Shown piece by piece: positions 3,697 through 52,886 of a stretch of DNA of 64,000 nt. Where the stretch lies: assembly GCF_902713615.1 (NCBI RefSeq), contig NC_052154.1:81323072-81387071 (forward strand), in the 5' to 3' direction. Below the pieces are notes generated by a model. It did not search any database. It was not told the DNA's origin and was given only the letters and a program-made list of their open reading frames with translations. How positions within the stretch are numbered: the first letter of the stretch is position 1; every line of letters begins with the position of its first letter. The stretch comes from Scyliorhinus canicula. Taxonomy: Eukaryota. The position numbers and the translations under genes were made by a program.

Positions 3697-3879
3697 TCAT
3701 TTCGTAAATGGCTTTCTTCCTTCTGCATCGATAACCTCTCTTCCACATCCTTGTCCTTTAGCCGGCAACTCCGCATACTCTGTTCTTCTTTTGTTATTGT
3801 TGCGTATCCCCGAGTTCACTGTGCCAGTCAATGCTAGAGCCGCGTAAATTAGCTTGTTATTGACTCCCTCTTGTTGGTC
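3697..3879 (-). CDS. Exon 7, terminal exon with ITIM LIYAAL and ITSM-like TEYAEL
   Basis: Acceptor ctttacag. Translation DQQEGVNNKLIYAALALTGTVNSGIRNNNKRRTEYAELPAKGQGCGREVIDAEGRKPFTK then TGA at 3697-3699. Confidence 0.88.
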   Translation of the reverse strand, partial: DQQEGVNNKLIYAALALTGTVNSGIRNNNKRRTEYAELPAKGQGCGREVIDAEGRKPFTK

Positions 3880-6800
3880 CTGTAAAGCCCATATTTGAAA
3901 GTATTGTTAATTCGTCTTTTTTCCACTTTTGCGCACTGCTGCTCAAAGCAGCTAACAGAAGCACAAGTAAACGTCGATACATCACACGATCAAAGGCAAC
4001 ATAAGAAAATTCCTCCCGTAAGATCATGAATGTTGATGTTACTCTGATAATCTATGACGTTTCTGTTACTCAGCCCTACCTGAGCGTGCACGCTTGTCTC
4101 CTCTTCACGTTTACGTCTTGGAGTTTTCCCCGCGCTGCTGAAATCTGGTGCAGCATAAGGCACACTCTGAACGGCGCTTCTCTGCAAAGGCTAGGAGTAA
4201 AATGTTTTATGAAGTGGCTCGTTCATTGGCTTCATCCGTTTTCCTTCCACTAAGCAAGCATTGAACAGATTGCCCTAGGCTGGACATCAATTGCACAGCC
4301 CAAATTTCAGACATGTACATGAATACGAGTGTTAATACACAATGGTCACCATAACTAATCTTTATATTTCTTACTACTCTACACCATGTCGCAAAATTGT
4401 TTCAACGAGCTTCAATTACTTTAGATCAATTTATTTTCAAACTCAAAGAATGAATCTATAAAGTTATTACCTGGGATTATGATCAGATAAATAATCGGCT
4501 TTCGTTTTTTATCCAATTAGCACTTTTTTTTTTAGAACAGTACAGCACAGAACAGGCCCTTCGGCCCTCGATGTTGTGCCGAGCAATGATCACCCTACTC
4601 AAACTCACGTATCCACCCTATACCCGTAACCCAACAACTCCCCCTGAACCTTACTTTTTAGGACACTACGGGCAATTTAGCATGGCCAATCCACCTAACC
4701 CGCACATCTTTGGACTGTGTGAGGAAACCGGAACACCCGGAGGAAACCCACGCACACACGGGGAGGACATGCAGACTCCACACAGACAGTGACCCAGCCG
4801 GGAATCGAACCTGGGACCCTGGAGCTGTGAAGCATTGATGCTAACCACTATGCTACCGTGCTGCACATTTTTTAAAACTGGTGCCAAGTACATATCTAAC
4901 CTTGAGTGAAAGGAGTTACTGACACCCGTCAGAAACCATTCAACAAATGGGTTGAAACTTCTAAGGTGATTATGATCCATCATTGTAATCGTACCATTCT
5001 TTCTGACATTTCGATCAGCTGTCGGCATGAATGAATGGACTTACCAACTCCTCGCGGTGGTTCAATCCCATTACAGATTCGCCCTTACCTGGAAATGAGT
5101 GAAATTTGACTTTAAATATTGAACTATTTATTCAACTTCCATATCAGAGATTGCAAAGACCCACCTAATGTAGAATAAAAAGCCAATTTTGAATTGTCGC
5201 TGCAATGTTGAAAATTCCAATGCTTCCAGCGATCAGCAGTGGTGCATTTTCTTTAGATCACATTTCGAAAAGCAAGGAAATGTTTTCGGACACTAAGGGT
5301 TACAAGGTTATGGAAAGAGGGGAGATTAGTTCAAGAGCAAGCATGAATTTATTGCTTGGGGCAACAGGCGAGAGGGCGATAGGGCGGACCTCTGCTCGTT
5401 TTCTCACCTTCCTCGGCGCGCAGCCATTCCCGGGCGGTACTTGCAAGGACCAGCTTCAAGCAGTTGAGTATCGGTAACGGAATAGGTTGGAAATGATTGC
5501 CTGGCAGCTTATTTTTTATTTATCATGCTGCAAAGGGGAAATTTCCGTTGGAACCTCCTCCCCGCTAAATTAATTTCCATGTTGATTCCGAACCTGTGAA
5601 CATTCTTGAGTTTTAAGATGCGTTTAGATTTAACCGAGTTTCCAAAAATGAAGTGGAGTTCACCTGAGGAAGGAGCAGTGGTTCGAAAGCTAGTGTTTGA
5701 AACAAACGTGTTGGACTTTAACCTGGTGTTGTAAGACTTCTTACCAAAAATGAAGAATAGTGATTTCAAATTGAACTCCTGAGCGAATTCTCCTCCCCCA
5801 CTCCCAGATGCTGTCCGGTGAGAGTCTAACCTTGAGCTTTACATTAAATCAAGTATTGATAACAGATCTTACCTTCATTATTCTGAAGTCGACACCGTCT
5901 TCCAATGACAGCCAGTAGCACTAGAAAGGCCAATCCAGCCACTGCACAAACTGGACCCCAGAGGACAAGTGAATTGCAGACAACATCTGCAATATTGAGA
6001 GAAAAATTTGGGCGTTGTATAAAAATATACACCAAAAGATAACTTAATGTTTAAACGACGACGATGCTTTCAATAATTTGAATGTGAGTCTTTGCATGTT
6101 GTTTTGCATTCAAAGTATCATCTTGCATCATTGGCTTTGTCTATATATATGTTTGTGTAACCCACCTCTTCGTCATCTGATGAAGGAGCAACGCTCCAAA
6201 AGTTAGTGATTCAAAACAAACCTGTTGGACTTTAACCTGGTGTTGTAAGACTTCTTACTGTGCCCACCCCAGTCCAACACCGGCATCTTCACATCAAAAT
6301 TACAGAGGATACAAGGGTAGCCAATCTAAACTTTCCTTATAAGACACCCCTCCCATCCCAGGTACCAGTCGATAAAGTCGTCTTTAAACTTCTTCGAAAG
6401 CATTTTCGTTCTTGATCAATGTTGTATGCAGTCTTCCAAATGTGCTCTGACCAATGACCTGTATAAATAAAGTATAACCCCTCTGATAGATTATCATATA
6501 ACATACTAACATTTCCTTTATCTTGTGCCCTGAATATCTTTGTGCAATCTTCCCAGTTCACACCTATCTTTTATTTTGCTCCACCTGCTCCATCCGATTT
6601 AGCGGTATGATATCCATCACATTTCTGTCTCACTTTAACTCTGAAGAAGAGACTTGCAGACTCGAAGTTAAGTCTATTTCCACAGATGCTGCCAGACCTG
6701 CAGTTCATCCAGCATTTTCTGTTTTCATTTCATATTTCCAGCATCCGCAGTATTTTGCTTTCATTTAATATAATGTGTTTTTTTGCGGAGGAATTGAATA

Positions 6801-9800
6801 TAAAAGTAGCGGCGTTGTGAAATAAATACAGAAAACACTGGATAAATTCAGACGGTCTGGCAGCATCCGTGGAGAGAGAAAGAGCTTTTGGATAATTTCT
6901 CTGTTTCAGTCTCCACAGATGCTACCAGACCTGCTGAGTTTACCCAGCATCTTCTGTTTTTATAACATTCCACTAATTACTTGCTGTGCTACATTCATTT
7001 TGTGATTCATACACTAGGACACCCAAGCCTCTCATCTCAGAACTCTGTAATCTCTCGCCATTTAGATAATACGTTTATTTTTATTCCTCCTGCCAAAATG
7101 TACACTTTTGCATTTTCCCACATTATACAACATTTGTCAGATCTTTACCCACCTACTTAACCTATCCGCATCACTTTACAAACTCCTTCTGTCCTTTTCT
7201 GAATTTACTTGTCTGTCGTTGTCTCGCCAGCAAACCTAGTAAACAAAGCTTCGGTCCCCTCATCCAAGCCATTTATATAAACTGTAACATTTGAGGCCCC
7301 GGCATTGATCCTCACAGATACTGCTTTTGGTGATGTGCAATACATGACTAAAATAGTTGTTCTCGTTCTCGACGTTTCCTATTTAGTAACATTCATAGTT
7401 CCATGAAATTAGAGGCCTTTTTTCACAAGTGTTTCTTCGCTGACACCACAAAATTCTGAATTGGAGCAATCGGTTGAGAATTCCCCTTTCAGTTAATTGA
7501 GCTGTGTTTGTCAAAGTGAGTAACAGAGATCTACGGAGGGGGTCTAATTGATTATTGTTTCGCTGGGGAAAAAATATTAATAACATGCGTTGGTCGGCTG
7601 CACAGTACCCTGGTTAAGCACAAAGTTCAAATGAGAGAGACAGATTCCAATGAAACACGGCATAGAGGGATAAGGGGTAAAAGTTGTCAAGTGCATTAAC
7701 CTCAGAATTCCGCACTGGAGGAAACCAGAATGGGAGCAAGCTTGGGAGCCGCAGTGGGAGACACTCCAGTGAAAACAGCATGATGGTAACTCCTTGACAA
7801 TAATGCCAGGTAAAATAGGCATATGGAAGCAAAATAAACTGATACAATCTTAATAATGTGGAGTGAAACATAGATAGAATAGATCAAACCTGTTTCCAAT
7901 TGTTGTGTGATTATAAAGGTATTTGAATGCAAATAAGGCTTGATCATTTTTGCAACACAGAGGCCCAATTGTCATGATAGATACATGGCATGTTGTAGAT
8001 TCACAGAATCTCCACAGTACAGACAGAGGCCATCAGGCCCACTCCAGCGACCCACTGAAAGAGCATTTTGCCTCGGCATATTCCCCGGCCGTATCACGGT
8101 AACCCACCTCACCTGCACACATTTGGACACGAGGGAGCAATTTGGCGTGGCTAATGCATCTAACCTGCATGTCTTTGGACTGTGGGAGGTAACCACAGGA
8201 AACCCACGCACACACGAGAAGAACGTGCAAACTCCACACAGTCACCTAAGGTCGGAATCGAACCCGATTCCCTGGCGCTGTGAGGTAGCAGTGCTAACCA
8301 CTGTGCTAACTCTGCATTTACCAGTGCCTATTTTACCTGCCATTATCGTCAAGGAGTTACCGCCATGCTGTTTTCGCTTGAGTGTCTCCCACTGTGCCAC
8401 CCTGCTGCCCGCCATGGTAAATATTCGACTGGAGATTACTATGTTTTCAAGAAGGACTTAGATGTAGTTTTTGGGGCGAAAGAGATCAAAGGACATGAAG
8501 GGACAAAGGGGGAATGCAAGAACAGGCTAGGAGTTGGCTGATCAGCCATCATCATAATGAATGGGAGGCTCGAAGGGCGGAATGGTCCACTCCTGGTCCT
8601 ATTCTCAATGTTTATATGTTTCTTTGGGCTAGCTTCACGATTGTCAATGGGTAAAACTTCTGCGTTTCATCTATTTGCGAATTTAACAGTAGCCACCTCA
8701 CCTTTTTGAACTCCCGGCCTCGAAACTTGATTGAATATAGAAACAGTGTGAGCAACGGCAGCAGGTATCTTGAGGGAGATATGTGATACCGAACAAGTAT
8801 AAGTGGTATCGCTCTGGAGAGGCTGCGTCTCAGTCAAAGAGCTGGAAACCTCATATAAACCCTCAGTGTTCTGGATGTTCACGGTGTGTATTCCTAATGT
8901 GGCTTCAGCACCATCTTTATACCAAGTGAGGGTCAACTCCTCCGGATAAAATGCGGCTGTTTTACACATAACAGTCAAAGGCGCAGAGATATTTCCTTCA
9001 GGTAACCTGGAAGCAATATTCAGTGGGAGCGGAGCAACTGTGGAGCAAATGAACAAAGCCGAGTTACTGAGCAACAGTATCAATGTTTGGGTTGCATAGT
9101 CGAAGGAATTAAGTAAAATAACTTAACGGAGCGGAGGGAGTGGGTGCTTGGAGTCGCTTCTGTTTGCAGATTTAACCGCTCATTGTTAATTACAAAATGA
9201 GGACCTCGAGTGACTTCAGACATAATTTGCAGCCAAACATTGTGAATGAAAATAATAAAATTTGGTTGAAACCTCAGTTGTTTTCGCCAACACAGTCCTG
9301 CTGTGTTGTTCCGTCCATGCAGGCCAGTGATTGTACAGGCCAGTGATTGTACAGTGTGCTGTGCTGCAAGCTTCAGTTTCTTCCGTGAATCAGTTCACCA
9401 CAGTTAGTTGTAAACTAATTTTGAACTCAGTGGTGCTAACGTAATGTGAGCATTAGTTTCGGGAGAACCGTGGAGGGAGCGAGGAAATCGAAACCACGCA
9501 TATGGTGGGAGAAACGCACTCGTTAACGATTGTCAGATTTTCACATGTACAGAAATAGATCTTTAAACTATCTGCTACATAAATTAGCCTCAGGATTACA
9601 TTCTCACTGTTTGACCTGTATATACGTTACAGGTACTGTGCGTGTGATATTGAACATCTAAATCAACAGATCTTTCCAGAAAACAAGGATATGGAATTTA
9701 GGTTATCTGCAGAGTCATCATTATCCTGCCAAAATCGGGGAAATCAGCAAGTACCAAACAACCCTGTTTGCTATGTTCCATATGTTTGAGATAAGCGCGT

Positions 9801-10366
9801 TCTCTATTGTTCCACACTTACCATGTACAATCAGATGTGACCCGGTTCCATTTCGTTCAGCTATTCCTTTACGCATCACGGCGCAGTGATAGACTCCAGA
9901 GTCGTGCAAAGTCGCGCTGAGCAAATTAAAGAAAGCTGTGGTTTCATTTTCATAGCCAAATCTTTTTCTACGATCAGTTCTTGTGTGGAGGTATTCATTC
10001 TCACGGTCTTTCCACCAATATACTTCCACTGGCGAATGGCGCTGAGAGGGAGGGAATGTGCAGTAGAATGTAACGTACCCACTCTTAGGTACAACCACTA
10101 GTTTGGGCGTTTGAGTGACACTGAATGGACGGTGGTCCGAGACTGTGAAGAAATATAGTCAAGTAGAAGGTAATAATATTAGATGAGACATAAAGAATAA
10201 TGAGAGAAGCAGTTAACCAGACAGAGTAATTACGATTCATTAAAGCAACTAGAAGCTACTCCGAAATCGTTCTATAAACTAAAACGGCTGGGCTAATGAA
10301 TATAGATGTACCTGTGTGAATAATCCCAGGGAGAGACAAGATAAGAAAACATATCCTCGCTGACAT
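3697..10366 (-). CDS. SIRP-like Ig-superfamily inhibitory receptor, L-V(J)-C1-TM-ITIM/ITSM, 384 aa; join(10312-10366,9822-10142,8702-9037,5873-5986,5045-5088,4080-4181,3697-3879)
   Basis: Seven exons with canonical AG/GT sites and matching phases (1,1,1,1,0,0). Lengths 55+321+336+114+44+102+183 = 1155 nt give an open frame from ATG to TGA. Domain motifs: V (C..W..DSGVYHC..GTGSHLIV), C1 (CKTAAFYP..W..YTCSVSH), hydrophobic TM, LIYAAL and TEYAEL. Confidence 0.9.
4080..4181 (-). CDS. Exon 6, cytoplasmic exon with degenerate tyrosine motifs (VPYAAP, SVHAQ)
   Basis: Acceptor cctttgcag, donor CAG|gtaggg; 102 nt, phase 0-0. Confidence 0.82.
4534..4864 (-). mobile_element. HE1-like tRNA-derived SINE with CR1-type tail
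   Basis: tRNA-like head (gcagcacggtagc..ggttagc; B box ggttcgattccc) and ttct tail. Family copies also at about 7996-8308, 17255-17545, 24272-24631, 24815-25155, 28458-28811, 28830-29179, 30381-30735 and 37665-37878. Confidence 0.88.
5045..5088 (-). CDS. Exon 5, short cytoplasmic exon GKGESVMGLNHREEL
   Basis: Acceptor catttccag, donor gtaagt. The 44-nt phase 1 to 0 exon is exactly what is needed to link exons 4 and 6. Confidence 0.8.
5655..5745. mobile_element. Penelope-like element fragment
   Basis: gaaggagcag..gaaagctagtg..aaacaaac.tgttggactttaacctggtgttgtaagacttcttac; further copies at about 6150-6295, 46240-46400 and 47555-47600. Confidence 0.65.
5873..5986 (-). CDS. Exon 4, Cys stalk plus transmembrane segment
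   Basis: Acceptor aatattgcag, donor G|gtaaga. Translation DVVCNSLVLWGPVCAVAGLAFLVLLAVIGRRCRLQNNE; uncharged TM followed by basic stop-transfer residues. Confidence 0.9.
7752..8394. repeat. 70-bp inverted repeat pair (7752-7821 / 8325-8394), possible old MITE with a nested SINE
   Basis: Arms are reverse complements with 6 mismatches in 70 and start CAGTGGGAGACAC. No TSD seen. Confidence 0.6.
8702..9037 (-). CDS. Exon 3, C1-set Ig domain
   Basis: Acceptor ttgctccacag, donor AAG|gtgagg. Translation APLPLNI...VMCKTAAFYPEELTLTWYKDG...GLYEVSSSL...YTCSVSHISL, the C1 pattern seen in MHC, TCR-C and SIRP. Confidence 0.93.
9320..9354. repeat. 16-bp tandem duplication (caggccagtgattgta x2)
   Basis: Direct reading. 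Confidence 0.9.
9822..10142 (-). CDS. Exon 2, V-set Ig domain with germline-joined J-like G strand
   Basis: Acceptor ttcttcacag, donor G|gtaagt. Translation SDHRPFSVTQTPK...FYC...VYWWK...DSGVYHCAVMRKGIAERNGTGSHLIVH. Confidence 0.93.
10312..10366 (-). CDS. Exon 1, signal peptide MSARICFLILSLPGIIHT
   Basis: ATG at 10366, hydrophobic core, phase-1 donor G|gtacat; joins the V exon as GTC. Confidence 0.8.
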
Positions 10367-27510: not shown

Positions 27511-30179
27511 AACTTGTGGGCATCCACGGGTGCCAGCACCAGAGGACAACAGGACTTTTGAATCTCACTCCATCTGCTCCTCTATCCCAAGGAGGAAGCC
27601 AGAAGCCTTCGAGCACTCATAAGGAGGAGGAGAGGCTGATCCGTAGGTAGGGGCCTTCCACTCGGGAGGCTCTGGGAGTGCGCGGCCCATCTGACTCCCT
27701 CCCTTCTCTGACCCGTCCAGCTCCAGCCTTGAACATTGAGCAGGGTGACACTGCCATACTGCAACCGAAAGCATGCCGGGACCCTTTGGGCCCGAGTACA
27801 TGTAGAATGTAACCAAAGCCATTGCAGACAACAGGACATGGCATACAGAAGGCTGCCTCCATCTCTGCTGTGGATCCTGGACAGACACTGAGAAATGGTG
27901 GGTTTAGGAAGGTGAAGAAAGTTTAGTTGCACTTAGTGGGCACTGGTGTTCTTAGGCAATTGTAGATAGTGTGCACTTATGTAAGAATTAAACCACCTTT
28001 GTCAATGTCTTATACCTTACTTTTTGCATCCTTTTTGAGCCTGCCTGCTCTCATTAGGTCTCTCCACGGACCGACTGCCGGAACTCAATGGCCGCTTACC
28101 TCTGAACTCCACTTCGGACGTGAGGCTTTCATGTTCCTGCTTTAAAAAACTTGTTGTAAAACCTGTTGGCTTGACATTGCGATGCCAGAGGAAGATTGTC
28201 TGGGGTCGGGGCAAGTTACCGTGGGACTGCCCACTCATGACATAATACTGAATTCAAATGGGTTCCTCCCACTTCCTGAGTGGAAACCTCATCACGCCAA
28301 GGAGGCGACTAGGGACATTCGCTGTAGAAGATCCAACTCAAAGGAACCCTCCCCTCTCTTTCAGGCTCAAAGGGCTGCATGGCGTCCTCCTATTCCTATT
28401 TTTTATCTCACCATCGTAACTTCCCTCCTCTTGGCTCCCATGACATTTTGCCTCCTTACATAGAATTTACAGTGCAGAAGGAGGCCATTCGGCCCGTCGA
28501 GTCTGCACCGGCTCTTGGAAAGAGCACCCTACCCCCTACCCAAGGTCAACACCTCCACCCTATCCCCATAACTCAGTAATCCCACCCAACACTAAGGGCA
28601 ATTTTGGACACTAAGGGCAATTTAGCATGGCCAATCAACCTAACCCGCACATCTTTGGACTGTGGGAGGAAACCAGAGCACCCGGAGGAAACCCACGCAC
28701 ACACGGGGAGGATGTGCAGACTCCGCACAGACAGTGACCCAAGCCGGAATCGAACCTGGGACCCTGGAGCTGTGAAGCGATTGTGCTATCCACAATGCTA
28801 CCGTGCTGCCCAAAATTAATTTTCTTTAATCATAGATCATAGAATTTACAGTGAAGGAGGGCATTCGGCCCATCGAGTCTGCACCGGCTCCTGGAAAGAG
28901 CACCCTACCCAAGGTTAACACCTCCACCCTATCCCCATAACCCAGTAACCCACCCAACGCAAAGGGCAATTCTGGACGCTAAGGGCAATTTATCATGGCC
29001 AATCCACCTAACCTGCACATCTTTGGACTGTGGGAGGAAACCGGAGCACCCAGAGGAAACCCACGCACACATGGGGAGGATGTGCAGACTCCACACAGAC
29101 AGTGACCCAAGCTGGAATCGAACCTGGGACCCTGGAGCTGTTAAGCGATTATGCTATCCACAATGCTACCGTGCTGCCCAGCATGCAAATGGCAGTGCAA
29201 AATCCCACCCTATGAGGCCATTTGAATGTTGATCTTACTTCTCTCTGGGGTTTTTTGTAATTAAATAAAATGAAAATGAAATGAAAATCGCTTATTGTCA
29301 CAAGTAGGCTCCAAATGAAGTTACTGTGAAAAGCCCATAGTCGCCACATTCCGGCGCCTGTTCGGGGAAGGCTGGTACGGGAATTGAACCGTGCCGCTGG
29401 CCTGCCTTGGTCTGCTTTAAAAGCCAGCTATTTAGCTCTGTACTAAACCAGCCCTTCGTAATGAGTTACTTTCCTTTGAAAACAAAGAAGTAAAGTTTTT
29501 TTTTCCAATTAAGGGGTTATTTTTTTCCAATTGTGGGGCAATTTAGCGTGGCCAATCTACCTACTCTGCACATCTTTGGGTTGTGGGTGTGAGGCCCTCG
29601 TAGATACAGGGAGAATGTACAAACTTCAAACGGACAGTGGCCAGTCCTTCTGAGGCCAGGATTGAACCCGGGTCCTCGCTGCCGTGAGGCAACAGTGCTA
29701 ACCACTGCGCCACCGTGCTGCCCTTTAATTTATCTGCATTAAATAGCATTTATGTATGTCTGTCCAACTTACCAATATCCCTATGTCTTCCTGAATGACG
29801 TAGGTCAAAGATAATTGCTCCTCATAGTCCAATCCCCCTATCCCCTTAATCATTCTGGTCTCTATTTCCTAAAATCGTTGAACAGCTGCAATATTCTTTT
29901 TTATCTCATGGCTATCATGAATATATCACTATTTGTTATACCCCTGACTTAGAAAGTGACTGGGTTAACTCTATATTTTGGCTCAATGATAACCTTTTAA
30001 TTCATTCTATCATCTACTTTAATGTATTCATTTTCAGTGTGCATTATTGTAATATCTTCAATTCATTGTCAACCAGGACCCCCAGAACACTTCCATTTTC
30101 CATGCACACTATTATTTTATTCCCAATTAAGAAATATCTGCTCACAGTGGGATCATTCCACTCTGGAATGGAGTTTAAA

Positions 30180-30345: not shown

Positions 30346-32017
30346 TTTCCACGGGTTGGCCAGAAGACCAGGTCAGTTGTAGAACATAGAACATAGAACA
30401 TAGAACAGTACAGCACAGAACAGGCCCTTCGGCCCTCAATGTTGTGCCGAGCCATGATCACCCTACTCAACCCACGTATCCACCCCACACCCGTAACCCA
30501 ACAACCCCCCCTTAACCTTACTTTTATTAGGACACTACGGGCAATTTAGCATGGCCAATCCACCTAACCCGCACATCTTTGGACTGTGGGAGGAAACCGG
30601 AGCACCCGGAGGAAACCCACGCACACAGGGGGAGGACGTGCAGACTCCACACAGACAGTGACCCAGCCGGGAATCGAACCTGGGACCCTGGAGCTGTGAA
30701 GCATTTATGCTAACCACCATGCTACCCTGCTGCCCCCAATTGGGTTCAGTTGTGACAGAGAGATGTTTATATATAATTGACCAAGGCGTTGGAGTCACTG
30801 ACAGGCAGACGCCTTGAGTGCAAGGGGAGAAATCCACTTGCTACATCTAGTAAAAGGATGAATGTGGCACTTCAGTTGCGGCCATGAAGTGAGATGTTGC
30901 GCATATGGTGGCTCCTGCCCGAGGATTTGATTTTTGGCTCATTTTTGCCTGTTTAATGGGTGATATAGTGTAAGAGTTAAGATTCCTCCTCTGATGTGAG
31001 ATGTTTCAAGATTGCCAAACAAGGTGTGTGTCTGGTAAAGGACCCTCATTGGACTCAGAAGGCATGCGTGGCGCAGGAGCGGAAAACAAAGGAATCTGTG
31101 TCATCGTTGCCTGCTCAGTGGACCACTGAGAAGTTGGTAGAGTTTTTTAAGAGGGAGTTTAGAAGGCAGAGACAGGTGGTGACGGACAATCTGGCAAAAG
31201 TGACTGAGCTAATTCACGTGGCTCTGGAAAGGGTGGAACAGTGGTTGGAGTTGAAGAACCCACCGATCCAGAAGTGGGGAAGATGCTCTCGGATCATGAT
31301 AATCAGATTGTTTCCTTGGAGGCAGAAGTGACGATGTTAGCAAAGAGGCAAAAAGTAATGAAGGCAAAGATTGATGACCTGGAGAATCACTCCAGACAAC
31401 AAAATTTGAGGATCATTGGGCTACCCAAAGGCATAGAAGGTGCGAAGGCCACAGGGTATGTGGCAAAGATGTTTGAGCAACTGAAAGAAGTGGACAGGGC
31501 CCACCAGTCATTGAGGAAGAAGCCCAGATTTGAGGAGCAGTCATGGATTGTCATAGTCTGACTCCACCGGTACTTAGACAAAGAAAACATCCTGAGGTGG
31601 GCAAAGGAAACACAAGAATGCAGATGGGAAGCCCACACCGTTAGAATTTACCAAAACGTAGGAGCAGAACTGACAAAAAGGTGAGCAGGGTTCAATAAGG
31701 CCAAGAGCAAAGTGAAATTCAGAGTGGTGTACCTAGCTCACCTGTGGGTCATGTATGGGGACAGGGACCATCATTTTGACACACCAGTGAAGACGAACAA
31801 CTTTATTAAGGAGCATGCACTGGGGACATTTGAATGTATTGGGTGGTTTCACCTGCATGGTGAAGCTTTGGATTTGTGTTTTTCTTTTTTTCACTTGGTT
31901 TTCCCTTTGTATTTTCCATGTTTCTGTAATATTTGTAATCCTGTGTTTGGAGTATGGGCTTATTGATACTTTAAAGCAATTTTTCTAATTGGTTGGTGAT
32001 ATACCTTCAATTCACAG

Positions 32018-47599: not shown

Positions 47600-50500
47600 G
47601 GTTAAAGTCCAAGAATGGCCAGAATGCCGGCCTCTCTCGCCTCCTGCACTCCCGGCTCCAAAGCTACCCCAAAGATCGCAAGCCCCCAGCCCGGCCTGAC
47701 CCTAGACCCAACCACTTCCGACAAAATCCCCGCCACCCTCTTCCAAAACCCCTCCAGAGCCGGACATGCCCAAAACATATGGGTGTGGTTTGCCGGGCCC
47801 CCCAAACACCTCCCACACCTGTCTTCCCCTCTGAAAAACCGACTCATCCTTGCCCCATCATGTGAGCCCTGTGCAGCACCTTCAGCTGAATTAGGCTGAG
47901 CTTGCGCGAGAGGAGGAAGAATTCACCCTCTCCAGGGCATAAGACCACGTACCATCCTCAATCTCTTCCCCTAGCTCTTCCTCCCAATTCACTTTGAGCT
48001 CATCTACTGAGGCCTCCTCTTCCTCCTGCATCAGCTGGTAGATAGCCGAGATCTTCCCTTCCCCGACCCACGTCCCCGTAAACACCCTGTCCTGCACCCC
48101 CCTTGGCGGCAGCCGCGGAAACTCCTCCACCTGCCTCTTAACAAAGTCCCTGACCTGCATATACCTAAAAGCATTCCCGGGGGTAGGTTCCACTTCCCCA
48201 CCAGCTCCTCCAGAGTCGCAAACTTCCCATCCAAGAAGAGGTCCCCAAACTGTCTGATGCCTGCCCTGTGCCAACTCCCAAATCCCCCACCCGTTCTCCC
48301 TGGCGCAAAACGGTGATTTCCCCGTATCGGGGCCCAAACTGAGGCTTTCACTTCCCCCCCCTATGCCGCCTCCACTGTCCCCAGATTTTGAGGACTCGTG
48401 GAGTACTTTGCCGGGGGGAGTGGAAGTAGGGCCGTCACCAAAGCCTCCAGACTCGTACCCGCACAGGACGCTACTATGCGTCACCCTCCCCTTCCGTCAT
48501 CCACCTGCGAATCATCGCCACGTTCGCCGCCCAATGATATCCACACAGGTTGGGCAGCGCCAGACCCCCTACCTCCCTTCTTCGCTCCAAGAATACCCTC
48601 CTTACTCTCAGGGCCTTCCGCGCCCACACAAACCCCAGAATCGACTTATTCACCCTTCTGAAAAAAGCCTTCGGGATCAATATGGGGAGGCGCTGGAAAA
48701 GAAACAAAAACCTCAGGAGCACCGTTATTTTAATCGACTGGACCCTGCCCGCCAACGAGAGGGGCAGCGCGTCCCACCTCCTGAACTCCTCCTCCATCTG
48801 CCCCACCAGCCTTGAAATGTTAAGCTTATGCATAGCCCCCCAGGTCCTAGCCACGTGGACCCCAAGATACCTAAAGCTCCCCTCAGCCCTCTTCAATGGG
48901 AGTTCCCCTATCTCCCTCTCCTGACCCCCCGGGTGCAGGACAAACGGCTCACTTTTCCCCACATTGAGCTTATATCCCGAAAAGTCCCCAAACTCCTCAA
49001 GTATCCTCAGCACCTCTGGCATCCCCTCAGCCGGGTCGGCGACATACAGCAGCAGATCATCTGCATACAGCGACAACCGGTGCTCCCCCCCCCCCCCCCC
49101 CCCCCCCGGCCGCACAATCCCCCTCCAACTCTTTGAGTCCCTCAGCGCCATGGCCAGGGGCTCAATTGCTAACGCGAAGAGCAGGGGAGACAAGGGGCAC
49201 CCCTGCCTCGTCCCTCTAGAAAGCCAAAAGTCCTCTGACCTCCTCCCATTCGTCACCACACTCGCCACCGGGAAGCTGTACAGCAACCTCACCCAGCTAA
49301 TGAACCCCTCACCAAACCCAAACCTCCGCAACACCTCCAACAGGTAACTCCACTCCACCCTATCAAAAGCTTTCTCCGCATCCATGGACGCCACTATTTC
49401 TGACTCCCCAGCCACCGGCGCCATCATCATAACATTCAGGAGCCTCCGCACATTGGCATTCAATTGTCTCCCCTTTACAAACCCCGTTTGGCCCTCATGA
49501 ATCACCGTCGGGACCACATCCTCCACCCTCCTGGACAGCACCTTTGCCAACAACTTGACATCTACGTTAAGGAGCGAGATCGGCCTATAAGACCCACACT
49601 GAAGGGGGTCCTTGTCCTGCTTCAGGAGCAAAGAGATAATTGCCCTGGACATCGTCGGGGGCAGAGCCCCCCCCCCCCCCCCCCCTCCTGGCCTCATTCA
49701 GGGTCCTCACCAGCAGCGGGCCCAGCAAATCTGAAAATTTCTGGTAAAATTTCACCGGGAACCCGTCAGGCCCGGCGCTTTCCCTGTCTGCATGCTTCCC
49801 AACGCCTCCACCAGCTCCTCCAACTCAATTGGGGCCCCCAAACCCTCCACCCGCTCGTCCCCTACTCTTGGGAACTCCAGCTTCTCCAAAAGGCGGTCCA
49901 TTGATGTCCTTTCCACCCCACACTAAGTTCCCACCTGCATCCATGGCTCCCCCAATTTCTCTAGTTGTCTCCCGCTTCCGGAGCTGGTGAGCCAACATCC
50001 GACTTGCCTTCTCCCCGTACTCATACACCGCCCCATACACCGCCCCCTGTGCCCTCCTCCACTGCGCCTCTGCCTTACGGGTGGTTAAAATGTCAAACTC
50101 CGCCTGGGGACTGCGCCGCTCCCTCAGAAGCCCCTCCTCTGGGGTGTCTGCATATCTCCTATCCACCCTGACCATCTCCTCCACCAGCTTCTCCCCCTCG
50201 ACCCTCTCCCCCCCCTCCCTGTGCGCCCGAATAGATATCAGCTCCCCTCTAACTACTGCCTTTAGCGCTTCCCAAACCATCCCAACCTGCACCTCCCCGT
50301 TGTCATTGGTTTCCAGATACCCCTCTATACCCCTACGGATCCACCCGCACACTTCCTCCTTCGCCAAAAGCCCCACATCCAACCTCCACATCGGTCACTG
50401 ATCCTTCCCCTCTCCCAGCTCCAGGTCCACCAAATGTGGGGCATGATCAGAAATGGCTATTGCCGAATACTCCGCCCCCACCACTCTCGGGATCAGCGCC

Positions 50501-52886
50501 CTGCTAAGCACGAAAAAGTCAATCCGGGAGTACGCCTTATGAACATGGGAGAAAAAGGAGAACTCCCTACCCCCGGCTTCAAGAATCTCCAAGGGTCCAC
50601 TCCTCCCATCTGATCCATGAACCCCCTCAGCACCGAGGCCGCTGCCGGCCTCCTGCCCGTCCTAGACTTAGAGCGGTCCAGAGCCGGATCCAGCACCGTT
50701 AAAGTCCCCACCCAGAATCAATCCCCCTGTCTCCAGGTCCGGGATCAGGGCCAGCATACACCGCATGAATCCCGCATCATCCTAGTTGGGGGCATAAACA
50801 TTAACCAAGACCACCCGCTCCCCCTGAAGTCTCCCACTCACCATCACATATCGACCTGCACTATCCGCCACCACTTTGGATGCAACGAACAACAGGCTCT
50901 TACCCACCAAAATTGTCACCCCGCGGTTCTTTGCATCAAGCCCTGAGTGAAAAACCTGTCCCACCCAACTTTTTCTTAGCCTCACCTGATCTGTAACCCT
51001 GAGGTGCGTCTCCTGGAGCATAGCCACATCCGCTCCCAGCCCCCTCAAGTGAGCCAAGACCCGGGATCGCTTCACTGGACCATTCAGCCCCCTCACGTTC
51101 CATATGACCAACCGAACCCGAGGGGCCGTTCACTTCCCTCTACGCCGATCAGCCATAGCCCTTCCTCAACCCACCACGTGCCCAGGGAACCCCCCCCAAG
51201 CCCGCTCCCCACGGTGGCAAACCCCCCTCCCAACCCCCCCTCCTCCTCCCCTCCAAACCCCTCCAGCCCTCCTCCTCCTCCAAACCCCTCCTCCTCCTCC
51301 CCCCTCCCCTCCAAACCCCTCCCAACCCCTTCACCATCCATTCCCTCACAGTCCCCGCAGCAATAACCGGGCACCCCCCCCTCCTCCCCTCCAAACCCCC
51401 CCCTCCTCCCCTCCAAACCCCCCCCTCCTCCCCTCCAAACCCCCCCACCCCCAAGCTAGGGTCCCCCTAGCTGTGTTACCCCCAACATTATGCTTCCATG
51501 AGTCAGCTGACTTCTGCTGACCCCGGCTACTCCCGCAATAACCATGACCCCCCCCCAATGCAACACAGCCACCAATCCCTCCCTACCAGTGCAGGCCCCG
51601 CCCCCAATTCCTCCAGCGCGGGAAGAAAGCCCGCACTTCCAACCCGAGCCCCGCCCCTCGACCCAACATGTGGGAAAAAACGGACACATGACACATCGGG
51701 ACCCCACACTACTCCCCAACCCACCAGTGGAAAAAACAAAAAAAGCACCACAATAAATAACCAACAGCCCCAAAGAAACCCCGAAAGAACCCAAATAACC
51801 ATAACTAAAATAGCGAAAACAAACAGGAAACAACCATCAGCAAACACAGCCAATATAGGCGAAAGGATACCCAAGAGGGCAAAGCCTCCAAACAAAGTAC
51901 ATTTCCCCCCAGCCCCCAGTCCGAATCCAAGTTCTCAGCCTTGACAAAAGCCCAGGCCTACTCCAGAGAGTCAAAATAGAGCTGACGGTCCTTGTACGTG
52001 ACCCAGAGGCGAGCCGGCTGTAGAAGGCCAAACTTCACCCCCTTCCTGTGGAGCACTCCCTTCGCTCGATTGAAGCCAGCTCTTCTCCTCGCCACCTCCG
52101 CACTCCAGTCCTGAAAAATCCGAACATCCGTGTTCTCCCACCTGCTGCTCCACTTCTTCACCCACCTCAACACGCACTCCCGGTCAACCAAGCCGTGGAA
52201 TTGGACCAGCACCACCCTGGGCGGTTCGTTCGGCCTGGGCTTCCGCTGCAGCACTCGATGGGCACCTTCCAGCTCCAGAGGACCACGAAACGGCCCCACA
52301 CCCATCAGCGAGTTTAACATTAGGACCACATAGGCCGTCAAATCCGAACCTTCCAGCCCCTCCGAGAGGCCCAAAATCCATAGATTCTTCCGGCGGGAGC
52401 GGTTCTCCATCTCCTCCATCCTCATCTGCTATTTCTTGAGCAGTGCCTTGTGTGACTCCACTTTCACTGCCAGGCCCAAAAGCTCATCCTCATTCTCCGA
52501 AGCCTTGTGCTGCAGCTCACGAATCTCCACGGCCTGAGCCGCCAGCTTGTCCAGCGAGGCCTTAAACGGCTCCAAAATCTCGGCTTTGAGCTCCTTGATG
52601 GAGCGCTGAAGCAGCTCCTGCTGCTCCCGCACCCACTGCTGCTGCTTCCCCGCCTGCCGCCATCTTGCTTTTTCTGCCTCTTGCCTTTCTCTGTGGTAAT
52701 ACCGACTTCCGGACCGCTCCACTGCGAGTCCAGTCCATCCACTGGCCGCTGGGCACACTGGCTGTGTTTCCCCCCGGGGGAAAGTCGAAACAGCGCGTTG
52801 CGGGCTCTTAAAAGAGCCCGAAACTCCAAAAAAAAGCAGGAGCTGCCGAACATGCGGCTTAGCTCTGCATTGCCGCCACCGGAAGT
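47600..52886 (-). mobile_element. 5'-intact L1-clade LINE, 3'-truncated, frameshifted
   Basis: ORF1 (MENRSRRKNL..), endonuclease (WNVRGLNGPVKR, LQETHL), RT (48474-49697: RQGCPLSPLLFALAIEP, LYADDLLL). Confidence 0.95.
51225..51445. repeat. C-rich tandem repeats (cctcctcccctccaaacccc-like) in the L1 inter-ORF region
   Basis: Several imperfect ~20-bp units read directly. Confidence 0.8.

What the first reader, a model, noticed from the sequence alone, without database searches (positions are those of the whole stretch)
3697..10366. Intact non-rearranging VJ-C1-TM inhibitory receptor in a shark-type genome
Seen in sequence: a complete 384-aa gene in which one exon encodes a V domain including the J-like G strand (YHC...NGTGSHLIV), followed by one true C1-set domain, a TM and ITIM/ITSM motifs. 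Established: C1-set domains are confined to few families (Ig, TCR, MHC, beta2m, tapasin, SIRP and a few relatives). A V(J)+C1 chain is the architecture of an antigen-receptor chain, and mammalian SIRPalpha is V-C1-C1. Inference: this is a V-C1 SIRP-like, germline-encoded inhibitory receptor of cartilaginous fish, probably one member of a multigene family. It is the most significant biology in the window and relevant to models of the pre-rearrangement receptor ancestor. I cannot tell from sequence alone whether it has been described.
Basis: partly seen in the sequence, partly recalled or inferred. Interest (0 to 1): 0.75.

Follow-up and report, generated by a model that had tools for sequence, protein, structure and literature searches.

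The report
Shark germline V-C1 inhibitory receptor gene
This is an intact shark gene for a cell-surface receptor built like a single antibody or T-cell-receptor chain that needs no DNA rearrangement and has an inhibitory tail; it is one more member of a large, unstudied shark, ray and chimaera family of paired inhibitory and activating receptors, so it is interesting but not unique.

Summary
On the minus strand, 10366..3697, seven GT-AG exons give exactly 384 aa. They encode a split leader, a single-exon V domain whose G strand is J-like (GTGSHLIV), one C1-set domain, a transmembrane segment, and a tail with an ITIM (LIYAAL) and an ITSM (TEYAEL) 23 residues apart.

- **Domains:** C1 identity is supported by Pfam (2.8e-13) and by fold. 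The window holds no second C1 or V exon, and no recombination signal lies near the V exon.
- **Family:** The gene belongs to a family seen here only in sharks, rays and chimaeras. It has about 80 cluster representatives. NCBI names them inconsistently ("SIRP-alpha-like", "tapasin-related-like", "CD276", "MHC II beta-like").
- **Paired receptors:** Inhibitory members (long ITIM/ITSM tails) and activating-type members (arginine in the membrane segment, short tail) are interleaved in the tree, some with near-identical ectodomains.
- **SIRP comparison:** It works like SIRP but is not shown to be a SIRP. It has one C1 domain, not two, and no protein named SIRP appeared among the V-domain hits whose names I obtained. 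The family C1 profile scores best against an Ig lambda constant domain, then shark UrIg2.

Caveats: the window's own protein is absent from the protein collection, so transcription is unverified, and three of five ancestral tail tyrosines are lost. This scan has already noted the same family at several other loci on this chromosome. I found no paper describing it.

The parts
10312..10366 (-). Exon 1: start codon and most of the signal peptide (MSARICFLILSLPGIIHT), phase-1 donor. It is followed by a short 169-nt leader intron (10143-10311), the 'split leader' layout of V genes.
   Evidence: aligns with the leaders of orthologues.
9822..10142 (-). Exon 2: the complete V-set domain in one exon. 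It includes the canonical Cys46, Trp61 and Cys105 (YHC) and the J-like G strand.
   Evidence: Pfam V-set 3.2e-9; 143 bits against the family V profile; AF2 pLDDT 90.3; Foldseek matches to vNAR, TCR V, CD79b, SIRP d1, PD-1 and NKp30.
9826..9849 (-). J-like motif GTGSHLIV (G-x-G-x-x-L-x-V), preceded by Asn so that it forms the sequon NGT. It is contiguous with the rest of the V exon.
   Evidence: NGTGSxLxV is conserved across the family; no RSS-like site in or next to the exon.
8702..9037 (-). Exon 3: the single C1-set Ig domain (Cys150, Trp164, YTCSVSH with Cys207).
   Evidence: Pfam C1-set 2.8e-13; PDB sequence hits to Ig constant domains and UrIg2; AF2 pLDDT 86.1 with a D strand; Foldseek top hits are MHC II beta2 and Ig kappa/delta constant domains.
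5873..5986 (-). Exon 4: stalk with a Cys (DVVCNS), the transmembrane segment (residues 244-266, holding the family-conserved Cys in VCAVAGL and no charged residue), and the stop-transfer RRCRLQNNE.
5045..5088 (-). Exon 5: short cytoplasmic exon (GKGESVMGLNHREEL).
   Evidence: Canonical splice sites; aligns with orthologues.
4080..4181 (-). Exon 6: cytoplasmic exon carrying two degenerate versions of ancestral tyrosine motifs. SVPYAAP stands where orthologues have VHYAAL, and TSVHAQ where they have TVYAQ.
3697..3879 (-). Exon 7: cytoplasmic end with the ITIM LIYAAL (3835-3852), the ITSM TEYAEL (3766-3783) and the stop codon (3697-3699).

Best explanation
The locus is an intact, non-rearranging gene for a type I membrane receptor. 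It is the inhibitory type of a cartilaginous-fish family of paired V(J)-C1 receptors.

**Shown**
- The gene structure.
- The V-set and C1-set identity of the two ectodomains.
- The uncharged transmembrane segment.
- An ITIM and an ITSM spaced 23 residues apart.
- Family membership.
- Activating-type sisters in the family, with an arginine in the membrane segment and short tails.

**Inferred**
- The V domain binds an unknown ligand.
- Src-family kinases phosphorylate Tyr336 and Tyr359.
- The doubly phosphorylated ITIM/ITSM pair recruits the tandem SH2 domains of SHP-1/SHP-2-type phosphatases, which dampen activation of the leukocyte carrying the receptor.
- Activating sisters signal through a DAP12/FcR-gamma-type adaptor.

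This is the same logic as SIRP-alpha/SIRP-beta.
For: - **Gene model:** seven GT-AG exons, 384 aa, collinear end to end with orthologues at 54-60% identity.
- **Domains by sequence:** V-set and C1-set by Pfam.
- **Domains by fold:** AF2 models with pLDDT 90 and 86. Foldseek hits are all VJ-type V domains for the V model and all C1 domains for the C1 model.
- **Exon count:** only one V and one C1 exon in the window.
- **No rearrangement signal:** no RSS near the V exon.
- **Family size:** 135 V-domain hits in 1.84 billion representatives.
- **Family taxa:** every V-C1 family member whose name I obtained is from Scyliorhinus, Mustelus, Heterodontus, Heptranchias, Stegostoma, Mobula, Hemitrygon, Pristis, Amblyraja, Hypanus or Callorhinchus. 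The V-only models named add Narcine.
- **Tail types:** of 72 V-C1 members, 30 have ITIM/ITSM tails and 15 have an Arg-bearing transmembrane segment with a short tail.
- **Paired-receptor pattern:** the tree interleaves the two types and has near-identical ectodomain pairs.
- **Placement:** the window gene sits in a 12-member clade with SH-aLRT 98.
- **SIRP logic:** the SIRP-alpha ITIM/SHP and SIRP-beta/DAP12 mechanisms are as reviewed in PMC12975943.
Against: - No transcript, annotation or protein fragment of this particular gene was found in the 5.8-billion-protein collection, so expression is unverified.
- The copy has lost three of the five tail tyrosine motifs that its orthologues keep.
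- The ligand, the expressing cell type, phosphorylation and phosphatase binding are all untested.
- The ectodomain is only 57% identical to the one same-species (S. canicula) member for which I have a V-C1 identity figure. It is therefore not a tight inhibitory/activating pair with that member.
Confidence: 0.7

Rival explanations
1. The copy is silent or decaying: a recently inactivated member of a fast-turnover receptor cluster that merely still has an open frame.
For: The protein is absent from the protein collection. Searches seeded from close relatives returned two other S. canicula members of the V-C1 family (P0001, P0097) but not this gene. A search with the V exon for 58-185-aa fragments found nothing. 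The tail has lost the first ITIM (SVPYAAP), the second tyrosine (Y to H) and the last one. An earlier scan note reports a relic of the family 577 kb away.
Against: A 1,155-nt frame is open across seven exons and all twelve splice sites are canonical. All structural Cys and Trp residues, the J motif and the two glycosylation sequons shared with the family are kept. The membrane-distal ITIM+ITSM pair, which is enough for tandem-SH2 binding in other receptors, is intact. Absence from an automatic annotation is weak evidence.
Confidence: 0.15
2. It is the cartilaginous-fish orthologue (or co-orthologue) of SIRP-alpha itself, having lost one C1 domain.
For: 'Tyrosine-protein phosphatase non-receptor type substrate 1-like' is the most frequent NCBI name in the family. 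It shares the V(J)-C1 order, the paired inhibitory and activating forms, and an ancestral tail of alternating xTYAxL and TEYAxL-type motifs. From my memory, not tested, that tail resembles the four-tyrosine tail of SIRP-alpha. SIRP d1 structures are among the Foldseek V matches, at ranks 10-26.
Against: There is one C1 exon, not two, here and in the family members inspected. No protein named SIRP appeared among the V-domain hits whose names I obtained, although not all 135 hits were named. SIRP-alpha was not among the best 60 solved chains for the C1 profile, whereas Ig lambda C (47.7 bits) and UrIg2 (39 bits per domain) were near the top. Automatic names in the same family also include tapasin-related, CD276, MHC II beta and Ig lambda. 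Synteny was not examined.
Confidence: 0.1
3. It is a B7/butyrophilin-type ligand (V plus C domain) rather than a signalling receptor.
For: There are weak Pfam hits of the C exon to CD80-like C2-set (1.4e-4) and the BTN3A2-like IgC domain (6.3e-4). Some members are named CD276, PD-L1-like or NCR3LG1-like.
Against: C1-set scores nine orders of magnitude better. The fold matches are MHC II and Ig constant domains. The V domain carries a J-like G strand and matches receptor V domains. The tail carries ITIM/ITSM, and sister genes have Arg-bearing transmembrane segments. Those are receptor features.
Confidence: 0.03

Closest known systems
SIRP family (SIRP-alpha / SIRP-beta), tetrapods
   Same: V domain with a J-like G strand followed by C1-set domains. 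An inhibitory member with tyrosine motifs that recruit SHP phosphatases, and activating members with a basic transmembrane residue. Germline-encoded. It is the commonest automatic name for this family.
   Different: One C1 domain instead of two. No protein named SIRP appeared among the V-domain hits whose names I obtained. Only two functional-looking tyrosine motifs in this copy. Ligand unknown. Orthology and synteny untested.
UrIg and UrIg2, non-rearranging VJ-C1 genes of elasmobranchs (PMC12227049; PDB 9dmx)
   Same: Single-exon VJ with a split leader, antigen-receptor-type C1 domains, found in cartilaginous fish. UrIg2 C1 and C3 score 39 bits each against the family C1 profile, second only to Ig lambda C among solved chains.
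   Different: UrIg has three C domains and is secreted. UrIg2 has nine or more C domains. This gene has one C1 domain, an ITIM/ITSM tail and activating twins. UrIg2 was not among the best 60 solved chains for the V profile.
PRARP genes of chicken and other non-mammalian vertebrates (Fu et al. 2019, J Immunol; cited in PMC10751288)
   Same: [quoted passage not shown] That is the same architecture.
   Different: No PRARP sequence was available to compare. No bird protein appeared among the V-domain hits whose names I obtained. The relationship is unresolved.
Ig light chains and TCR chains
   Same: V(J)-C1 order, split leader, phase-1 domain exons. The C1 profile's best single-domain score among solved structures is to an Ig lambda constant domain (47.7 bits). 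The V fold matches TCR V, Ig kappa V and shark vNAR.
   Different: V and J are one exon with no RSS. The V domain is short, with only 14 residues between the C and D strands and no C'' strand in the model. It has its own signalling tail.

Membership tests
Cartilaginous-fish V(J)-C1 paired-receptor family (unnamed; automatically named 'SIRP-alpha-like' and others) | V domain with the family signature YWWK...DSGVYxC...NGTGSxLxV, encoded in one exon | tested here: met
   Alignment A2, 29-60% identity to 27 members; 143 bits against the family V profile.
Cartilaginous-fish V(J)-C1 paired-receptor family (unnamed; automatically named 'SIRP-alpha-like' and others) | One C1 domain with PTPL...LxCxTxxFYP...TWYK...EGLYEVSS...YTCxVSH | tested here: met
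   Alignment A1, 35-67% identity; 147 bits.
Cartilaginous-fish V(J)-C1 paired-receptor family (unnamed; automatically named 'SIRP-alpha-like' and others) | Full-length collinearity and placement inside the family tree | tested here: met
   54% identity over 379 residues to P0137; 12-row clade with SH-aLRT 98.
Cartilaginous-fish V(J)-C1 paired-receptor family (unnamed; automatically named 'SIRP-alpha-like' and others) | Inhibitory subtype: uncharged transmembrane segment with a conserved Cys, and a long tail with xTYAxL and TEYAxL motifs | tested here: met
   VCAVAGL transmembrane segment, 122-aa tail with LIYAAL and TEYAEL; three other ancestral tyrosines are lost.
SIRP family | Ectodomain V-C1-C1 (three Ig domains) | tested here: not met
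   Only one C1 exon in the gene and in the whole window; orthologues are also V-C1.
SIRP family | V domain specifically related to SIRP d1 | tested here: inconclusive
   An exhaustive phmmer search of 1.84 billion representatives gave 135 hits at E<=0.001. Those whose names I obtained are chondrichthyan family members, reptile multi-V proteins and one teleost protein, with no protein named SIRP; many hits were never named. SIRP d1 is only one of many V folds matched.
SIRP family | Orthology by synteny, and CD47 binding | not testable with these tools
   The window holds no flanking non-family gene, only LINE ORFs. DNA of the annotated catshark chromosome could not be fetched.
Ig C1-set domain | C1 sequence signature and a seven-strand ABED/CFG fold with a D strand | tested here: met
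   Pfam PF07654 at 2.8e-13, 50.4 bits against a cut-off of 21. The AF2 model has strands 49-55 (D) and 61-69 (E). All top Foldseek hits are C1 domains.
Rearranging antigen receptors (Ig/TCR) | V and J as separate segments flanked by RSS | tested here: not met
   V through the J-like strand is one open exon ending at a splice donor. The five RSS-like sites in the window all lie about 10 kb or more from the V exon. The four matching strings with 22-23-nt spacers lie in a dispersed repeat, and the fifth (52695, 13-nt spacer) is unrelated.
UrIg / UrIg2 | VJ followed by three or more C1-type domains; specific V and C relatedness | tested here: not met
   There is one C1 domain. C1 similarity to UrIg2 domains is 32-40 bits, below Ig lambda C at 47.7. 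UrIg2 is absent from the best 60 V-profile hits.
PRARP | Sequence relatedness to chicken PRARPA/B | not testable with these tools
   The paper and its sequences are not held.
ITIM/ITSM inhibitory receptors | Consensus (S/I/V/L)xYxx(I/V/L) and TxYxx(V/I/L) motifs in the cytoplasmic tail | tested here: met
   LIYAAL (334-339) and TEYAEL (357-362), tyrosines 23 residues apart.
ITIM/ITSM inhibitory receptors | Tyrosine phosphorylation and SHP-1/SHP-2/SHIP recruitment | not testable with these tools
   Needs biochemistry.

The most novel reading that the evidence does not exclude
This family, rather than SIRP or UrIg/UrIg2, could be the closest surviving germline relative of the light-chain/TCR-type V(J)-C1 chain. 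On that reading it is a membrane-bound, signalling, paired-receptor descendant of the pre-RAG receptor. The precursor invaded by the RAG transposon would then already have been an inhibitory/activating innate receptor of this type. The family C1 profile's best single-domain match among solved structures is Ig lambda C. The V domain is a compact VJ domain that matches vNAR and TCR V folds.
Probability: 0.1. Interest if true: 0.8.

Novelty: new member of a known kind. Interest (0 to 1): 0.45.

Why it matters
C1-set domains and J-bearing V domains are the hallmarks of antigen receptors, and germline genes that join them are the material for models of what the RAG transposon invaded. Cartilaginous fishes carry a large, clustered family of V(J)-C1 receptors with paired inhibitory and activating forms, alongside UrIg and UrIg2. 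That shows this architecture was widely used for innate-type signalling in the oldest jawed vertebrates. It also offers many sequences for rooting V and C1 trees.

This gene is one more intact inhibitory member, apparently missing from public protein sets. It shows lineage-specific erosion of tail motifs. By itself it does not change the picture.

Tried and rejected
1. **Missed exons or further copies.** I looked for a second C1 exon, a hinge exon or further V/C1 copies in the 64 kb window with tblastn and family HMMs. There were none.
2. **RSS search.** The window has five RSS-like hits. Four are one string inside a dispersed repeat and the fifth is unrelated. All are about 10 kb or more from the V exon.
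3. **Annotation or transcripts of this copy.** Three word-indexed searches failed to return the window's protein or any fragment. Absence is weak evidence because of the tool's length and word limits.
4. **DNA of the nearest catshark paralogue (P0001).** It was not available because the file is too large. I therefore did no synteny or dN/dS analysis and made no independent check of the species.
5. **Explicit SIRP, PRARP, TCR and IgL domain trees.** I could not build them because no tool gave me those sequences, and typing them from memory is unreliable. As substitutes I used PDB profile scores, Foldseek and NCBI names.
6. **PDB profile rankings.** These are dominated by multi-domain sums. Only the per-domain scores of the top two hits are usable.
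7. **Literature.** The PRARP paper and the 2023 UrIg paper are not held. Searches for SIRP or paired receptors in sharks found nothing on this family. The CD28-family survey (PMC11599192) concerns single-V receptors only.
8. **B7/butyrophilin reading.** Rejected on domain scores and tail features.


Full report
**Observation.**
The region reads as a gene on the minus strand. I rebuilt it independently from stop-free stretches and splice signals.
- The seven exons are 10366-10312, 10142-9822, 9037-8702, 5986-5873, 5088-5045, 4181-4080 and 3879-3697.
- Every intron is GT-AG, and the junctions around the leader, V, C1 and transmembrane exons are in phase 1.
- There are six introns, not seven junctions.
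- The leader intron is 169 nt, the 'split leader' layout that Flajnik et al. describe for antigen-receptor genes (PMC12227049).

**Domains.**
- *V exon (106 aa):* Pfam V-set, 3.2e-9, covering the whole model.
- *Next exon (111 aa):* C1-set, 2.8e-13 (50.4 bits against a cut-off of 21). CD80-like C2-set scores only 1.4e-4.
- *C1 model:* AlphaFold2 with family alignments gives pLDDT 86.1, with a clear D strand before E. Foldseek returns only C1 domains: MHC class II beta2, Ig delta and Ig kappa constant.
- *V model:* pLDDT 90.3. It is a compact V domain with only 14 residues between strands C and D and no C'' strand. It matches shark vNAR, TCR V-alpha and V-beta, Ig kappa V, CD79b, SIRP-gamma/alpha d1, PD-1 and NKp30. 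That is the general class of J-bearing V domains, not one family in particular.

**Non-rearranging status.**
- The G strand GTGSHLIV is contiguous with the rest of V and runs into a splice donor.
- A heptamer-spacer-nonamer scan found five loose matches in 64 kb, against 0-3 in shuffles.
- All five lie about 10 kb or more from the V exon. Four are one string with 22-23-nt spacers inside a dispersed repeat, and the fifth, at 52695, is unrelated.

**Nothing was missed.**
tblastn with each exon, and hmmsearch of family V and C1 profiles against the six-frame translation of the window, find only these two Ig exons (143 and 147 bits). Everything else is noise. The rest of the window consists of LINE reverse-transcriptase and endonuclease ORFs and SINEs.

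**Relatives.**
- An exhaustive phmmer search of 1.84 billion cluster representatives with the V exon gave only 135 hits at E<=0.001. The best was 56% identical.
- Word-indexed searches and cluster look-ups name the V-C1 members. All named ones are chondrichthyan: Scyliorhinus canicula and S. torazame, Mustelus, Heterodontus, Heptranchias, Stegostoma, Mobula, Hemitrygon, Pristis, Amblyraja, Hypanus and Callorhinchus.
- named V-only models from the same taxa plus Narcine.
- The other named hits are reptile multi-V proteins and one teleost protein that match only the V domain.
- NCBI's automatic names are inconsistent. 'Tyrosine-protein phosphatase non-receptor type substrate 1-like' (SIRP-alpha) is the commonest. 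Others are SIRP-beta-1-like, tapasin-related-like, CD276 homologue, H-2 class II beta-like, Ig lambda-like, NCR3LG1-like and PD-L1-like.
- Within each species, all members for which the look-ups report a contig lie on one chromosome-sized contig.

**Gene model validated by homology.**
My model aligns end to end with Heptranchias P0137 (54% over residues 1-379), Heterodontus P0136 and P0140 (56-60%) and others. A full-length alignment shows each cytoplasmic exon matched.

**Paired-receptor family.**
- Of 72 V-C1 members including the window gene, 30 have an uncharged transmembrane segment and a long tail with ITIM/ITSM motifs.
- Another 15 have an arginine in the outer part of the membrane segment and a short tail, often ending ...IVDH.
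- Another 18 are models without a transmembrane segment, and 9 are other.
- A maximum-likelihood tree interleaves the inhibitory and activating types. It also contains near-identical ectodomain pairs of opposite type, P0119/P0123, P0042/P0047 and P0142/P0006. That is the signature of paired receptors.
- The window gene is the inhibitory type. It lies in a 12-member clade (SH-aLRT 98) with members from Heptranchias, Heterodontus, Mustelus, Mobula and Stegostoma.

**Tail.**
Orthologues carry up to five tyrosine motifs in the order VHYAAL, TVYAQ, LTYATL, T(E/D)YAEL, AVYSE.
- The window gene keeps the third and fourth, as LIYAAL (ITIM, residues 334-339) and TEYAEL (ITSM, 357-362), with the tyrosines 23 residues apart.
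- The first has become SVPYAAP, the second TSVHAQ (Tyr to His) and the fifth EVIDAE.
- An ITIM-ITSM pair at that spacing is what tandem-SH2 phosphatases bind in SIRP-alpha, PD-1 and similar receptors. This rests on established knowledge and on the review PMC12975943. It is inferred here, not shown.

**Comparison with known families.**
- *SIRP:* the best functional analogy, with V(J) then C1, an inhibitory form plus Arg/Lys-transmembrane activating forms, and germline encoding (PMC2785349). Membership is not shown. There is one C1 domain, not two, and no protein named SIRP appeared among the V-domain hits whose names I obtained.
- *Family C1 profile against solved chains:* Ig lambda C scores 47.7 bits. 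UrIg2 domains C1, C2 and C3 score 39.2, 32.4 and 39.7. IgG CH1 and CH3 score 31-32. SIRP-alpha is outside the best 60 chains.
- *UrIg/UrIg2:* they share the single-exon VJ and C1-type domains, but have three or at least nine C domains and no ITIM tail.
- *PRARP (Fu et al. 2019):* this is, as I recall, the same VJ-C1-TM-tail architecture in birds and other non-mammals. I could not obtain the paper or the sequences, so the relationship is open.

**Weak points.**
- The window's own protein did not appear in any search of the 5.8-billion-protein collection, although two other S. canicula members of the V-C1 family did. I therefore have no evidence that this copy is annotated or transcribed.
- I could not fetch catshark chromosome DNA. 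The species assignment to small-spotted catshark rests on earlier scan notes.
- Those notes report the same family at about 35, 150, 437 and 577 kb upstream on the same chromosome, including an activating-type neighbour. They are unchecked leads. They agree with my finding that several S. canicula members lie on one 198.8-Mb chromosome.

**Verdict.**
The gene is a new, apparently unannotated, inhibitory member of a cartilaginous-fish V(J)-C1 paired-receptor family. It works like SIRP but is not demonstrably a SIRP. I found no description of the family in the literature I could search. The scan has met it repeatedly, so this copy adds little beyond the family-level story.

Noticed in passing
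window 41418-43400 (-) and 47891-50391 (-): LINE-type retrotransposon remnants. There are ORFs with an endonuclease/exonuclease/phosphatase domain (42282-43400) and reverse-transcriptase domains (41418-42236 and 48474-49697). No other cellular gene was detected in the window.
   Followed up: partly
window 4536-4870 (intron 5 of the gene), 8122-8308 (intron 3), plus about 14 more copies such as 30404-30733 and 28534-28812: A SINE-like dispersed repeat of about 330 bp with at least 15 copies in 64 kb at 67-95% identity. Two copies sit inside introns of the receptor gene.
   Followed up: partly
window 20161, 29328, 34054, 40484 (within a repeat also at 45789-45893 and elsewhere): A second dispersed repeat carries an RSS-like string: CACAGTA, a 22-23-nt spacer, then ACAATAAGC. 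It accounts for four of the five RSS-like hits in the window. It is probably chance resemblance inside a transposable element and is not near any V exon.
   Followed up: partly
window 9850-9852 with 9826-9849; family alignment A2: In this family the residue before the G-x-G bulge of the J-like strand is Asn, not the Phe/Trp of Ig/TCR J segments. This creates a conserved N-glycosylation sequon (NGT) on the G strand in 20 of the 28 aligned members.
   Followed up: no
window 5970-5986 (start of exon 4): This copy has a 7-8-residue insertion in the membrane-proximal stalk that contains a Cys (DVVCNS). The orthologues aligned lack it. It could form an interchain disulfide as in Ig/TCR chains.
   Followed up: no
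family proteins P0145, P0028, P0040, P0092, P0111, P0152 (other species): Many activating-type members share a membrane segment with Arg near the outer face and Asp/Glu-His (...IVDH) at the inner end. The two charges suggest a specific, unidentified adaptor.
   Followed up: no
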